In this document: in pieces, positions 59,080 to 64,000 of the stretch
Position numbering within the stretch: position 1 is the first letter of the stretch
How the letters are laid out: each line of letters begins with the position of its first letter
Assembly (NCBI GenBank): GCA_038496445.1
Contig: JALMLS010000416.1
Location: 1 to 64,000 of the forward strand
DNA length: 64,000 bases
Direction: 5' to 3'
DNA from: Trichosphaerium sp. ATCC 40318
Lineage: Eukaryota; Protista; Tubulinea
The notes under the pieces: generated by a model
What the model was told of the DNA's origin: nothing
Database searches by the model: none
The model's input: the letters and a program-made list of their open reading frames with translations, nothing else
Translations under genes and position numbers: made by a program

Positions 59080-62000
59080 TTATTCACCTCTTGCCAAATA
59101 ATGTCTAACACCAATCTTGATAAGCTTTTGTACATTATGACCAGTTTTTACATTTACTTCTACACCACAAAGAGATAGATTATCGCAAAAAGTCTGCACA
59201 AAACAAAGAGTTAGAACCAAGTTTGTTGCTTGTCTAGAACACCATCCAAGTTGTCAAAATAGCATTTCGTTGTTGGTCATGCTGTACTATTAAGCACGTG
59301 CGCCCCATCAAATTTTTGGGAGCACAGTACTTATTTTGTAACAGACAACTTGACTGCGAAAAACAAACATTAGTTGTTACCTTAATTTTATTGCTAGTAA
59401 TCTCTTGTTCATCAGGAGAAGTTTCATTGCTTATAAAAGCTAACACTCTTGGCGAATCTTCTTTAGCATATCTGTCTAACTCCTGAAGCCAGGTGCAACA
59501 GCTTTTGATACCTAACAAAGTCAAAAAAGTGCAATATAGAAAATTATTGGTATGAGATTAAACATCTCCTCTCGTACCTACAGCACTTTCAACATCACAA
59601 CAAACAATTAAACATTGAGCCTTATTATACACCCAATCGCCAAAACAATTATGAACCTATACAAACGAGTAATAAGAGTAAGATCAGGCACTAAGTTTAA
59701 AAAACTTACTACAATAACAACTTCAAACTCCTCACTATCGACTTGATAGAAACATCCTACCTAGGACATCAAAATTAGTTCACTATTAGTAAACGTAAAC
59801 TTACAGCTCTATGACCAAAATGCCAAACATGTTTGGTATACATCTCACAACCTGAATCCCTCAGGTACTGTGTTATTCCTAAGAAGATATTTTAACAAAA
59901 CTCCAAATGGTTTTTTTTTGAGTTAGCTTCTTTGCTTGCTTTACCTTCTTTACAGTTTTCTCCTATGAGGTTAATAAATATAGTCCTTGGTCCAGAACTG
60001 TATGATCTAGTTTTTGATTCCAGTTCCTTTTTGTTACTACCATGCAACTTGTGTTTTTTCGCTTCATCGTGCTTCTTTTCTGTTAAAGAGTTAAGTTGAC
60101 TTCAAAAATACTATTCCACCCCAGTCAATGGTACAATTTATGGTAGTGTGAATAAATAACCAAATTAATCTCACACGTATTCTGGTGTGGTCATAAAAAA
60201 CAAGAAAAGCTTGACTACGCCCGGAAAGGCTTCAAGTTTTTGTTTCACTTAAAATGAACACAAACAAAACTCGCTGCTTTTAAACCACTCATAAAATCCA
60301 AACTAAGCTACGTTATATAAAGACTTACCAAGCATGTGAATGTATCGTTTTGCATGTGGAAGCCATGAATGTAAACCTGTAACAAAAAATGTCAACAAAG
60401 GCAAACAACTCATTGTTCTTTGATATGGTCTCGACTATACCTTCAAAAGGAGATGCTTTATTAATCTGACCAACCATGAATGCAAAAGATCTACATGTCC
60501 ATGCTATACACACTCTGCTTGAAGGTACATCAAGGAAACCAAAAATAATCAACCATATTTCGATTGGTGTATTTGACACAAACTGTGATGTCGTTGGCTT
60601 GTACTTTTCTATAATCTTTTGACTTTTACGGGAATAACTTCTCGCTATATCAACAAGAGTCCCATCAATGCCCTAAATAAGCTTTCAATAACAAATATCC
60701 ATTATGTGGGGTTCAAACAGCTCACAAAACAATCATTAGGAAAGGAGATTGGATTAAAAACTTTTGCTTGGTTGTTTGGTTAGAGTACGATCAAACGCTC
60801 TCACATAGGCATGTACCTCTTCTCCAAGGAGGTACAACATATTTTTGTGTCTCACGTGGTTCACTAATACTTTCAAGACCTTACTTGACTTTCTTCTTGC
60901 TGCCTAGTAAAAACAGTTGTTAGAAAACTGCTATTGCATTCAGGCGCTGGTAAAATTGCAAGTCGTTGCCTGTTGCACTGTATTCTCTTACGTAATGAAG
61001 TGCTGTTTCGCTGTTCCTATAATCACTGTAAGGTTAAAGTATAGTTTACAAGAAAGCAAGGTACAATCACAAGCAGCCAAAAAGTAAGAGCGAAAGAAAA
61101 AGAAAAAAAAGTTCTTGTTGAAGAGTACGTTGTGAGCTTTGTTATATCTGCTCCTCTTCGTAATAGATACTTCACAACGAACGTGCTATTATGTTTAGCA
61201 GCGAGATGAAGTATAGTCTCATGTGTCTTGTTATCTCTCAAGTCAACAGAAACTAAACATCCAAATTAAGAACACCATTAAGACATTAATCTTCGTTGGT
61301 ACCTTTCTCAAGTAGGGCATCAAATACCTTCAGATAGAAACATCTTTGAGTCTCTCCTTTAGGTTCTAAAGTTATAAGATCCAGAGGTGCTTGTCCAACG
61401 CTGTTTTCGCGATGATATTGGCAAGATGTTACAATTAATAACATGCTCAATACAACATCAAGATCTTCTCTTTCACGCCATACAATATGCTCAAGTAAGC
61501 TTCCCTTTCTTCCCTCAATATCTTTTGTAGTGTTGATAACTTCGTCTATGCAAAAGCCGAATATATCAGTGCGATCTGTAGATGATAGAATTAGTAACTA
61601 AGCTTCAATAGAAATAATTACCTTTCAATAACACTCGGAGTAAAACTGCATCACCGCCTTCTTGTGTTGTAATAAAACTTTTAGCAGACTCTGGAAGACG
61701 CTCGTAAAGGCTCCATTTTTGTTTAATAAGCATGTTAAGCCAAAGAAATGGAGATAAACCAAATCTGTAAAATAAGTTAAAAAAAGTTGTTGGAATTTAC
61801 GTTTCTGGATAACCTCTATTTAATCAACGCTTACCTATTCCTCTTACGTAAGTCACCTCCATTTTTAAATAGCCACCAGAAGAAAGAAGTATTGAAGTGG
61901 TATAAACTAATGAGGATAGGTGTATCACCGATATTGTTTTGACAATTTATATCAAGCCCTAATTCGAACGAATAAATACTTGCGTCAGCACACGTGCGAA

Positions 62001-62890: not shown

Positions 62891-64000
62891 ATGGCTGCCT
62901 CAAATCAAAGTGGAAATGTTGCACCTATTGTAAAGCAAAGAACTATTAACGCAGACGGTACAGTTGGAGAAAATACCTTAATAGAGAGCCTGGACGCCCT
63001 TTCATTGTCTTTCTGCCTTCTAGCAGCGTCTGACGACGCTATTTTAGGCGTTCTAAGCTTCCTCGACTTAGAAACGCTTTATGCAACGTCTACTACTTGC
63101 GCACGCCTAAACACACTTGCTAGATACCAAATATCGCTCTTGCCATCGATTCCACAGTATACTATTAAAGATCAAATGCAGGGATTGATGGAATTTACTT
63201 TTTCTCAACCTCTGGACAAGGATGCAATCTACACGCTCCATGTCTCAGGAGTACCTATTACATATAACAAGGAAGAAGGCTACACCATTTTGCCCGTTGA
63301 TGAGAGACCTAGTTGTTATGACGCTATAAGTGAAGGTACAATACTGTTCACTTCAAAATCACTAAAGAAAGGGCTTCCTGGGAATGAAACTGTTTATGAA
63401 ATTAATATGGGCGGATACACAAGTACTTACATACAGTCTTTGTTGACTTTGTACTTTTCGGCAAAAAAGAAGGGTATTACAGTAAGGAGTAAACCATTTA
63501 AGACTACTCTTCAGCCTGGATATCCGTCATGCTTTGATGGAAATGCTTTGATTCATATGTCAGATGGAACTCAAAAGAGAGCGAAGTATATTGAAGTTGG
63601 TGATAAGGTTATTTCATCAAAAGATACTGTTCAAATAGTAAGAAAAGTCAGTTCTACTACAGGAAGAGTAAAAAAGTTGATGGTGAAACTTGGTGATTTT
63701 TGGATTACAAGAGGTCATCCAGTTTTCGTGAATGGTGATTGGTTCGTTGTCGTTATATCTAGCTTTGTAGTAGACATGTTTATTTTTCTTTCTTTTTTCT
63801 TCCTTTTGATGTTGCAGCGATATACTAACTCTTGGTTTAGGTTCAGACCGGATGAATTGTACCAAACCGAACTGAGAGTATCAGATGGTTTGTATAATTT
63901 TGTTCTAGATGGAGAGCATACTATACGTGTTGGCTTATCTAAAGTCTTTACGTGTTGTACACTTGGAAAATATTGTGGTGATAGATTGAGCAGTTTGTAT
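62891..64000 (+). CDS. F-box + Hint (Vint/Hedgehog-intein-like) autoprocessing domain protein; runs off window end
   Basis: Open frame from ATG 62891 to the window end. F-box: LLAASDDAILGVLSFLDLETLYATSTTCARLNTLA. Hint starts at Cys 63530: CFDGNALIHMSDGTQKRAKYIEVGDKV...WITRGHPV...W|FRP...LYNFVLDGEHTIRV...CCTLG. There is an in-frame 99-nt intron at 63742-63840. Confidence 0.82.
   Translation, partial: MAASNQSGNVAPIVKQRTINADGTVGENTLIESLDALSLSFCLLAASDDAILGVLSFLDLETLYATSTTCARLNTLARYQISLLPSIPQYTIKDQMQGLMEFTFSQPLDKDAIYTLHVSGVPITYNKEEGYTILPVDERPSCYDAISEGTILFTSKSLKKGLPGNETVYEINMGGYTSTYIQSLLTLYFSAKKKGITVRSKPFKTTLQPGYPSCFDGNALIHMSDGTQKRAKYIEVGDKVISSKDTVQIVRKVSSTTGRVKKLMVKLGDFWITRGHPVFVNGDWFVVVISSFVVDMFIFLSFFFLLMLQRYTNSWFRFRPDELYQTELRVSDGLYNFVLDGEHTIRVGLSKVFTCCTLGKYCGDRLSSLY

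What the first reader, a model, noticed from the sequence alone, without database searches (positions are those of the whole stretch)
62891..64000. F-box protein carrying a Vint-type Hint (intein-like) autoprocessing domain, absent from the ORF track
Seen in sequence: an F-box at the N-terminus and a spacer of about 130 aa. The Hint domain has block A Cys1 (PS/CFDG), block B TxxH (ITRGHP), and Vint-like YNFVL..H and CCTLG motifs. No intein His-Asn end is visible before the window edge. Established: Hedgehog-type Hint domains cleave N-terminal to Cys1 through a thioester and can ligate a nucleophile to the released N-fragment, and classical Vint proteins carry vWA upstream. Inference: an SCF adaptor could self-cleave and become covalently joined to a small molecule or protein, tagging it for ubiquitination. 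This would be an undescribed autoprocessing and degradation device.
Basis: partly seen in the sequence, partly recalled or inferred. Interest (0 to 1): 0.8.

Follow-up and report, generated by a model that had tools for sequence, protein, structure and literature searches.

The report
Self-cleaving F-box protein with Vint domain
This is a real two-exon gene of an amoeba-like protist that joins a docking motif of the cell's protein-tagging machinery (F-box) and a small beta-sandwich to a hedgehog/intein-type self-cutting domain; I found this combination in no paper, and nobody has tested what the cut achieves.

Summary
An open frame starts at 62891, runs off the window and stops at 64042 on the contig. 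It contains one 99-nt phase-2 intron (63742-63840), so the product is 350 aa.

- **Hint domain.** It scores 45.7 bits against Pfam Vint (cut-off 27). Its predicted fold matches the solved Tetrahymena Vint domain (8r2c: Z 16.6, rmsd 2.2 Å). Cys214, Thr273 and His276 are invariant across the family.
- **F-box.** The gene alone is below the Pfam cut-offs. The call is supported at family level: profile-profile 97.8%, E 9e-13, against bona fide F-boxes; three confident helices matching Skp1-bound F-boxes; and relatives that pass both the F-box and Vint cut-offs.
- **Spacer.** The "spacer" is an FN3-like beta-sandwich.
- **Family.** This genome holds at least seven intact paralogs under purifying selection, plus one canonical VWA-Vwaint-Vint gene. 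The named relatives all come from Amoebozoa transcriptomes.
- **Other fusions.** The same short Vint type also follows methyltransferase, LIM and GRDP-like N-termini. It therefore looks like a generic C-terminal processing module.

Self-cleavage at Ser213|Cys214 is inferred, not shown.

This scan has already reported three paralogs of this gene on other DNA of the same genome, with the same reading. No paper in the searchable library describes the F-box-Hint architecture.

The parts
62891..63741 (+). Exon 1. It holds codons 1-283 plus the first two bases of Trp284, and encodes the N-terminal arm, the F-box, the beta-sandwich and the N-terminal half of the Hint domain.
   Evidence: First in-frame ATG after a stop. 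Translation. The exon end is fixed by the conserved TG|GT donor shared by all paralogs.
63008..63139 (+). F-box-like three-helix motif, residues about 40-83. The usual Leu-Pro is replaced by Ala-Ser.
   Evidence: Pfam F-box-like scores 15-16 bits and F-box 13-14 bits, both below cut-off. hhalign of the family against bona fide F-boxes gives 97.8%, E 9e-13, over residues 40-80. The AF2 helices 48-55, 60-67 and 71-83 have pLDDT 83-95. Structural matches are 5ibk_E (Z 8.2, 47 of 48 aa) and the F-box of 6o60_C FBXL2 (Z 6.8, rmsd 1.8 Å).
63143..63520 (+). FN3/Ig-like beta-sandwich, residues about 85-210.
   Evidence: AF2 strands span 90-207. Many FN3 domains match at Z 7-8.3 and cover the whole domain. 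Foldseek gives only sub-threshold Ig/FN3 hits.
63527..63532 (+). Predicted scissile junction Ser213|Cys214. Cys214 is Cys1 of the Hint domain.
   Evidence: Cys is invariant in 7 paralogs and 16 family members, always 59-60 residues before the Thr of TxxH. It aligns with residue 1 of inteins, Hh-C and 8r2c.
63530..63741 (+). N-terminal half of the Vint-type Hint domain, residues 214-284, including TRGHP (Thr273 and His276 at 63707-63718).
   Evidence: Pfam Vint profile positions 1-71. Matches 8r2c chain residues 5-77 at E 1e-7.
63742..63840 (+). Phase-2 intron of 99 nt, GTTCGT...TTTAG, with a TACTAAC branch-point box at 63823-63829. It happens to be in frame and free of stops.
   Evidence: Six paralogs have an intron at the same position in the Trp codon. 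Their lengths are 40-206 nt and most shift the frame. BLASTP against relative P0002 shows a 33-aa gap exactly here. The Vint profile and 8r2c are continuous across it. pLDDT is low over 285-318.
63841..64000 (+). Exon 2, which continues to 64042 on the contig with the stop included. It encodes the C-terminal half of the Hint domain (FRPDEL, LYNFVLDGEH, TCCTLG with invariant Cys355 in unspliced numbering, Cys322 in the mature protein) and a conserved 25-aa tail YCGxRLxxLyPxxNxxfG.
   Evidence: Pfam Vint positions 73-115. 8r2c chain 81-124 at E 1e-4. Family invariants. Positions.

Best explanation
The locus is an intact, expressed-type two-exon gene for a 350-aa cytosolic protein. It has three modules: an F-box (about residues 40-83), an FN3-like beta-sandwich (about 85-210), and a short Vint-type Hint domain (214 to about 327 in mature numbering) followed by a conserved 25-aa tail.

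The most likely mechanism follows Hedgehog C-domains, BIL domains and inteins. Cys214 attacks the Ser213 carbonyl in an N-to-S acyl shift, assisted by Thr273 and His276. The acyl group possibly passes to the invariant Cys of TCCTLG, as with Hedgehog C143. The thioester is then resolved by water or another nucleophile.

This releases a fragment of about 23 kDa, F-box plus sandwich, that can dock on Skp1 and act as, or be regulated as, an SCF substrate receptor. The Hint domain plus tail is discarded, or it governs when the fragment is released and with what C-terminal group.

Shown here: the gene structure, the three folds, intact catalytic residues, purifying selection, and the family. Inferred: cleavage, Skp1 binding, and the fate of the thioester.
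For: - **Gene model.**
- **Vint domain.** Pfam 45.7 bits against a cut-off of 27. The family profile matches 8r2c at E 6e-17. The fold match to 8r2c is Z 16.6, rmsd 2.2 Å, 131 aa; Hh-C 1at0 scores Z 11.4 and inteins score Z 9-12.6.
- **Catalytic residues.** Cys1, Thr and His of TxxH, and the first Cys of CC(T/S)LG are invariant or nearly so in 16 divergent members.
- **F-box.** The family profile pulls bona fide F-box/LRR proteins out of 1.84 billion sequences at E 7e-10 to 3e-8 through its positions 15-65. hhalign gives 97.8%. Structural matches are to Skp1-bound F-boxes. Relatives P0003, P0010, P0151 and P0069 pass the Pfam cut-offs for both F-box and Vint.
- **Skp1.** Skp1 genes are present in this genome.
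- **Selection.** dN/dS is 0.12-0.27 for the Hint domain and 0.38 for the N-terminal part.
- **Expression of relatives.** Relatives occur in Trinity transcriptomes of three Amoebozoa.
- **Mechanistic precedents.** Hedgehog C1, TxxH and C143 (PMC12054796). BIL2-driven conjugation (PMC8616854). Burglin's view that Vint proteins are processed inside the cell (PMC2362128).
Against: - No RNA run was listed for this genome, so splicing and expression of this copy rest on comparison only.
- This gene's own F-box score is below the Pfam cut-offs, and the canonical Leu-Pro is missing (Ala47-Ser48). Skp1 binding is not assured.
- The structural F-box hits score Z 6.8-8.2, a range the tool itself warns can be common for short helical pieces.
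- No Vint domain has, to my knowledge or in the papers I could search, a demonstrated cleavage product or adduct.
- The folded model used the unspliced frame, which carries a 33-aa insert.
Confidence: 0.6

Rival explanations
1. Covalent capture or conjugation. The thioester at Ser213 is resolved by a lysine of a target protein, or by a small molecule or lipid, rather than by water. The F-box-sandwich fragment then becomes covalently attached to something. That would mark the target for SCF ubiquitination or anchor the adaptor.
For: Hint thioesters are used this way elsewhere. Hedgehog uses cholesterol (PMC12054796). Tetrahymena BIL2 conjugates a ubiquitin-like domain to lysines without ATP (PMC8616854). 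The 25-aa tail after the Hint fold is conserved, with invariant Cys362, Arg365 and Pro371 in unspliced numbering. It could be an adduct-recognition element. Burglin noted U-box-VWA-Vint proteins, another link between Vint and ubiquitin ligases.
Against: Nothing here shows an adduct. The same Vint type with the same tail follows methyltransferase, LIM and GRDP-like N-termini, so whatever it does is not specific to F-box cargo. The tail is far shorter than the Hedgehog sterol-recognition region.
Confidence: 0.12
2. The N-terminal helices are F-box-derived but no longer bind Skp1. The protein then has nothing to do with SCF ligases, and the Vint domain is simply a generic self-removing C-terminal module of amoebozoan proteins.
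For: The gene's own Pfam F-box scores are below cut-off, and Leu-Pro is replaced. The same Vint type is attached to unrelated N-termini.
Against: The F-box region is the best-modelled part of the N-terminus, with pLDDT up to 95. It is conserved in all seven paralogs. It matches bona fide F-boxes that also lack the Pro and still score 42-56 bits in Pfam.
Confidence: 0.15
3. The Hint domain does not cleave. It serves as the substrate-binding or regulatory domain of an F-box protein, in the place where other F-box proteins carry WD40, LRR or Kelch repeats.
For: F-box proteins normally carry a C-terminal interaction domain. No cleavage has been shown for any member.
Against: The nucleophile Cys1, the Thr and His of TxxH, and the downstream Cys are strictly kept across very divergent members, while surface positions vary. 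dN/dS is lowest in the Hint part. This pattern is typical of catalysis. The FN3-like sandwich already offers a binding domain.
Confidence: 0.1
4. The locus is a decaying pseudogene or a chance open frame.
For: The intron is read through without a stop. Fragments of the family with stops exist on contigs C1 and C71.
Against: The frame is intact, the splice signals are conserved, dN/dS is well below 1, all catalytic residues are kept, and Pfam E is 8e-12.
Confidence: 0.02

Closest known systems
VWA-Vwaint-Vint proteins (Pfam PF14623; Burglin 2008, PMC2362128; Tetrahymena Vint structure 8r2c)
   Same: This is the best sequence and fold match for the Hint domain: Pfam Vint above cut-off, 8r2c at Z 16.6 and 32% identity over 131 aa. 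Shared motifs are WIT..HP, GEW..P.EL, LY.FVL..H and C..LG. Both are intracellular, and both lack an intein C-terminal junction.
   Different: There is no VWA and no Vwaint domain upstream. The last 50 positions of the Vint profile (116-166) are absent, replaced by a 25-aa tail YCGxRLxxLxPxxNxxYG. The motif has a Cys-Cys pair instead of a single Cys. The genome keeps one canonical VWA-Vwaint-Vint gene separately on contig C42.
Hedgehog/Hog C-terminal autoprocessing domains (PF01079; 1at0)
   Same: Same fold (Z 11.4). Cys1 follows a small residue, a TxxH motif is present, and a conserved downstream Cys could play the part of Hedgehog C143. The domain sits C-terminal to a variable 'cargo' (PMC12054796; PMC2362128).
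   Different: Pfam Hint scores 22 bits, below the 29.7 cut-off. There is no sterol-recognition region and no visible signal peptide. The cargo is cytosolic.
BIL domains of ciliate BUBL loci (6tmm, 6y75)
   Same: A Hint fold (Z 11.1) tied to the ubiquitin system. The thioester at the N-terminal junction is used to conjugate the upstream domain (PMC8616854).
   Different: BIL2 sits between two ubiquitin-like domains and keeps a C-terminal Asn. Here the upstream part is an F-box adaptor, nothing follows the Hint tail, and conjugation is not shown.
F-box proteins (PF00646, PF12937), substrate receptors of SCF ligases
   Same: An N-terminal three-helix F-box is followed by a beta-rich domain. Profile and fold matches are to Skp1-bound F-boxes.
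   Different: Leu-Pro is missing and the single-sequence score is below cut-off. I found no F-box protein described with a C-terminal autoprocessing domain.

Membership tests
Vint (PF14623) | Profile match above Pfam's gathering score | tested here: met
   45.7 bits against a cut-off of 27, E 8e-12. Profile positions 1-71 lie in exon 1 and 73-115 in exon 2.
Vint (PF14623) | Hint blocks A and B: N-terminal Cys nucleophile and TxxH | tested here: met
   Cys214, Thr273 and His276 are invariant in 7 paralogs and invariant or nearly so in 16 family members.
Vint (PF14623) | Fold like the solved Vint domain | tested here: met
   8r2c_A: Z 16.6, rmsd 2.2 Å, 131 aa, 32% identity. Foldseek E 7e-8.
Vint (PF14623) | VWA and Vwaint domains upstream (the architecture that defined the family) | tested here: not met
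   No VWA or Vwaint hit in the protein. Both are found in the canonical gene on C42.
Vint (PF14623) | Full-length domain, including profile positions 116-166 | tested here: not met
   The match stops at position 115 in this gene, its paralogs and its relatives.
F-box (PF00646 / PF12937) | Profile match above Pfam's gathering score | tested here: not met
   13-14 bits against 20.5, and 15-16 bits against 24.3, for this gene. Six of 7 paralogs match weakly, best E 1.8e-4. Relatives P0003, P0010, P0151 and P0069 pass.
F-box (PF00646 / PF12937) | Homology to bona fide F-boxes at profile level | tested here: met
   hhalign gives 97.8%, E 9e-13, over 41 columns. The family profile retrieves F-box/LRR proteins at E 7e-10 to 3e-8. 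Caveat: the comparison set was chosen from those hits, although Pfam validates each of them independently.
F-box (PF00646 / PF12937) | Three-helix fold as in Skp1-bound F-boxes | tested here: met
   Helices 48-55, 60-67 and 71-83 have pLDDT 83-95. 5ibk_E scores Z 8.2 over 47 of 48 aa. 6o60_C scores Z 6.8, rmsd 1.8 Å.
F-box (PF00646 / PF12937) | Conserved Leu-Pro at the start of helix 1 | tested here: not met
   Ala47-Ser48 here. Val/Ile/Ala followed by Thr/Ser/Asn in the paralogs.
F-box (PF00646 / PF12937) | Binding to Skp1 | not testable with these tools
   Skp1 genes exist in the genome. No complex prediction or assay was available.
Hedgehog/Hog domain (PF01079) | Hint profile above cut-off plus a sterol-recognition region | tested here: not met
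   22.4 bits against 29.7, covering only profile positions 12-49. Only 25 aa follow the Hint fold.
Intein | C-terminal His-Asn followed by Cys/Ser/Thr and a C-extein | tested here: not met
   The protein ends ...FGPSILG with no His-Asn and no downstream extein.

The most novel reading that the evidence does not exclude
The short Vint module of Amoebozoa may be a general intracellular 'C-terminal activation' device. It would convert the end of its cargo into a thioester that is passed to a defined acceptor, either a protein lysine or a lipid or small molecule recognised by the conserved YCGxRL..P..N..YG tail. The cargo here is an F-box adaptor; elsewhere it is a methyltransferase or a LIM protein. 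For the F-box members this would give an SCF adaptor that is covalently tethered to its target or to a membrane. It would be an enzyme-free conjugation route beside the BUBL system of ciliates.
Probability: 0.12. Interest if true: 0.9.

Novelty: new variant of a known kind. Interest (0 to 1): 0.6.

Why it matters
Hint domains are best known from animal Hedgehog signalling and from selfish inteins. What the widespread intracellular Vint branch does is essentially unknown.

This gene offers a compact 350-aa protein in which a Vint domain with all catalytic residues sits directly behind a recognisable ubiquitin-ligase adaptor. That makes a simple question directly testable: does it cut, what is left on the new C-terminus, and does cutting switch SCF function?

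If it only self-cleaves, it is a new way to mature or time an F-box protein. If it ligates, it would be a second natural case, after ciliate BUBL, of Hint chemistry feeding the ubiquitin system. It would also be a possible small self-cleaving tag for protein engineering.

The finding that the same Vint type follows several unrelated N-termini in Amoebozoa extends Burglin's observation that Hint-type domains readily acquire new cargo.

Tried and rejected
- **Word-indexed protein search.** A search with exon 1 found nothing at E <= 1e-3. The family is too divergent for it. The exhaustive profile search did find relatives.
- **RNA evidence.** No sequencing run was listed for this stretch.
- **ESM Atlas.** The search by features gave no usable hit. 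The search by fold gave only generic Hint clusters, and none with this architecture.
- **Foldseek on the N-terminal model.** Nothing at E <= 1e-3.
- **Intein reading.** Rejected, because there is no His-Asn, no +1 nucleophile and no C-extein.
- **Hedgehog/Hog membership.** Rejected, because the profile score is below cut-off and there is no SRR.
- **Transmembrane reading of residues 285-317.** The hydrophobic 33 aa in the unspliced frame could be read as a membrane helix. I rejected this because it is an intron: the position is conserved, branch point and acceptor are present, and the stretch is absent from relatives.
- **Active-site distances.** I could not measure them because model coordinates are not exposed to scripts.
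- **Organism identity.** Not determined. I saw only that the named relatives are Amoebozoa.
- **Joined exons.** No search or fold was run on a joined (spliced) protein. The exons were searched apart by reference, and the fold used the unspliced frame. In one search a script joined the two exons only to count 350 codons and 0 stops. That sequence was not printed, saved or sent to any tool.

Full report
**What is in the sequence**

The window is contig C161:1-64000 of a 70.3-Mb, 642-contig eukaryotic assembly. The window is 37% G+C. From the ATG at 62891 a frame stays open to the window end. On the contig it stops at 64042, giving 383 codons unspliced. It is absent from the ORF list only because ORFs that run off the source are not listed.

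**Gene model**

The frame holds a 99-nt phase-2 intron at 63742-63840. It starts GTTCGT, carries a TACTAAC box at 63823-63829 and ends TTTAG. Three results support it.

- Six paralogs in the same genome have an intron at exactly this point, inside the Trp codon of G(D/E/N)W|(F/Y)RPDEL. Their lengths are 40 to 206 nt, and most shift the frame.
- BLASTP of the unspliced frame against relative P0002 shows a 33-residue gap exactly there.
- The Pfam Vint profile (positions 71 to 73) and the solved Vint chain 8r2c (residues 77 to 81) run on without a break across it.

The product is therefore 350 aa.

No RNA run was listed for this stretch, so splicing of this copy is inferred from comparison. No joined protein went to any tool. 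In one search a script joined the exons only to count 350 codons and no stops.

**Hint domain**

- Pfam Vint (PF14623) scores 45.7 bits against a cut-off of 27. Hedgehog Hint (PF01079) scores 22.4 bits against 29.7.
- A profile of 16 family Hint domains hits the Tetrahymena Vint structure 8r2c at E 6e-17.
- The AlphaFold model has mean pLDDT 78.4, and 85-98 in most of the Hint core.
- The model aligns to 8r2c at Z 16.6, rmsd 2.2 Å, 131 residues and 32% identity. It aligns to Hedgehog C-domain 1at0 at Z 11.4, to BIL2 at Z 11.1 and to many inteins at Z 9-12.6. Foldseek agrees, with E 7e-8 for 8r2c.

The residues invariant or nearly so across 16 divergent members are listed below in unspliced numbering; subtract 33 after residue 284.

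- Cys214
- Gly237-Asp238
- Thr273, Gly275, His276, Pro277
- Trp284
- Arg319, Glu322, Asn336
- Cys355, the first Cys of TCCTLG
- Gly359, Cys362, Arg365, Pro371

Cys1 always lies 59-60 residues before the Thr. There is no His-Asn, no +1 nucleophile and no C-extein, since the protein ends ...FGPSILG. Protein splicing is therefore excluded. N-terminal cleavage or ligation chemistry of the Hedgehog, BIL or Vint kind remains.

Hedgehog uses C1, TxxH and a downstream Cys (C143) that takes the acyl group as a branched intermediate (PMC12054796). The invariant Cys355 is a candidate for that role. This is an inference; I could not measure distances in the model.

**F-box**

On this gene alone the call is sub-threshold: F-box-like 15-16 bits against 24.3, and F-box 13-14 bits against 20.5. 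The canonical Leu-Pro is Ala47-Ser48. At family level the evidence is good.

- Six of seven paralogs give weak F-box matches, best E 1.8e-4.
- The seven-paralog profile, searched against 1.84 billion representatives, retrieves F-box/LRR proteins P0043, P0060 and P0075 at E 7e-10 to 3e-8. It does so through its positions 15-65 only.
- Those proteins score 42-126 bits on Pfam F-box models. Two of them also lack the Pro.
- Profile-profile comparison of the family N-terminus with those F-boxes gives 97.8% probability, E 9e-13, over residues 40-80.
- The model has three confident helices at 48-55, 60-67 and 71-83, with pLDDT 83-95.
- They superpose on Skp1-bound F-boxes: 5ibk_E at Z 8.2 over 47 of 48 residues, and FBXL2 in 6o60 at Z 6.8, rmsd 1.8 Å. 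The tool warns that such Z values are not decisive for short helical pieces.
- Relatives P0003, P0010, P0151 and P0069 pass Pfam's cut-offs for both F-box and Vint.
- The genome encodes Skp1.

I take the F-box as real, with Skp1 binding untested.

**The 'spacer'**

Residues 85-210 fold as a beta-sandwich. It matches FN3 domains and the transglutaminase N-terminal sandwich at Z 7-8.3 over the whole domain. Foldseek gives only sub-threshold hits. This domain is the natural candidate for the substrate-binding part.

**Family and distribution**

- This genome holds at least seven apparently intact members, on C161, C113, C71, C11, C66, C70 and C28. It also holds fragments with stops on C1 and C71, and partial copies on C66 and C112.
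- It keeps one canonical VWA-Vwaint-Vint gene on C42, with Vint at 151 bits over the full profile.
- dN/dS between paralogs is 0.12-0.27 in the Hint part and 0.38 in the N-terminal part.
- About 30 of the best 150 database hits share the family motifs FWITRGHP, W(Y/F)RPDEL and C(C/S)(T/S)LG.YC..RL.
- Most of these come from unnamed JGI or Logan contigs of 1.0-1.4 kb that carry one complete uninterrupted ORF.
- The named ones are Trinity transcripts of Mastigella eilhardi, Pyxidicula operculata and Amoeba proteus, all Amoebozoa.

The same short Vint type, with the same tail, also follows other N-termini.

- A methyltransferase, in A. proteus P0023.
- LIM plus F-box, in P0151 and the C28 paralog.
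- F-box plus a GRDP-like domain, in P0003.

This makes the Vint module look like a portable C-terminal processing device rather than something tailored to F-box function.

**Literature**

Burglin (2008, PMC2362128) defined Vint as VWA-Vwaint-Vint. He noted a few members with an upstream U-box and judged these proteins to be processed inside the cell. F-box is not mentioned. Full-text searches combining F-box with Hint, Hog, intein-like or Vint terms found no paper describing the fusion. BIL2 of Tetrahymena shows that a Hint domain can conjugate its upstream ubiquitin-like domain to lysines without ATP (PMC8616854).

**Interpretation**

My best reading, at about 0.6, is a cytosolic F-box-FN3 precursor that removes its Vint domain by thioester chemistry at Ser213|Cys214, yielding or regulating an SCF substrate receptor.

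The rivals are:

- an F-box relic with no SCF role (about 0.15);
- a non-cleaving Hint used as a binding domain (about 0.1);
- a pseudogene (about 0.02).

**Earlier notes of this scan**

Three follow-ups on other pieces of this genome (s1-372481, s1-387268, s1-400809) described paralogs as F-box plus beta-sandwich plus Vint in an amoeba-type protist, with no paper found. My independent tests agree. The present gene is a further member of that already reported family.

**Verdict**

The domain interpretation is supported, and the proposed degradation device is untested. This is a new domain architecture of a known autoprocessing domain. Interest 0.6.

Noticed in passing
L022 = G000:C28:216271-219516 (exon 1 at L022:793-1719); also protein P0151: One paralog, and a database relative, carry a LIM zinc-finger domain in front of the F-box. 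The architecture is LIM, F-box, sandwich, Vint. LIM scores 40 bits in P0151 (E 4.8e-10) and E 2.3e-9 in the paralog.
   Followed up: partly
Protein P0023 / P0163 (Amoeba proteus transcripts); L032:1432-3802: The same short Vint type ends a 688-730-aa protein that begins with a class I methyltransferase domain. On Logan contig L032, a methyltransferase gene call lies just upstream of Vint protein P0157. The two may be one spliced gene.
   Followed up: partly
L027 = G000:C42:18568-21792 (ORFs 153-1283 and 1534-2031): This is the genome's single canonical VWA-Vwaint-Vint gene (VWA 40 bits, Vwaint 87 bits, Vint 151 bits). It is split by an intron just before the Hint domain.
   Followed up: yes
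window 60325-60579 (-) and 61023-61450 (-): Upstream on the other strand lie a short ORF with a weak F-box-like start (19.3 bits, below cut-off) and exons of an ankyrin-repeat gene (Ank 29.6 bits).
   Followed up: partly
L001:3039-3122 (contig C161:64429-64512, just past the window end): About 390 nt downstream of the stop, a short ORF begins MTEEVAITMDAVSMVPDEIWLMMFN and then runs into a GTACGA donor-like site. It looks like the first exon of another F-box-type gene. At 28 aa it gives no Pfam hit.
   Followed up: partly
G000:C1:1040758-1044662, C71:146775-146879, C66:86888-87586, C112:5-202: These are fragments of the family. Those on C1 and C71, and part of the second C66 copy, carry in-frame stops; the C112 piece is an exon 2 at a contig edge. 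They suggest turnover of copies by duplication and decay.
   Followed up: no
Alignment A6 (proteins P0002, P0012, P0018, P0026, P0098, P0021, P0016): A second subtype of the family has C(S/T)SLGGYCPRLA..DP..D..YGRGYG and a longer conserved C-terminal tail (...Y.WLL.L.ERIP...). F-box N-termini occur in both subtypes.
   Followed up: no
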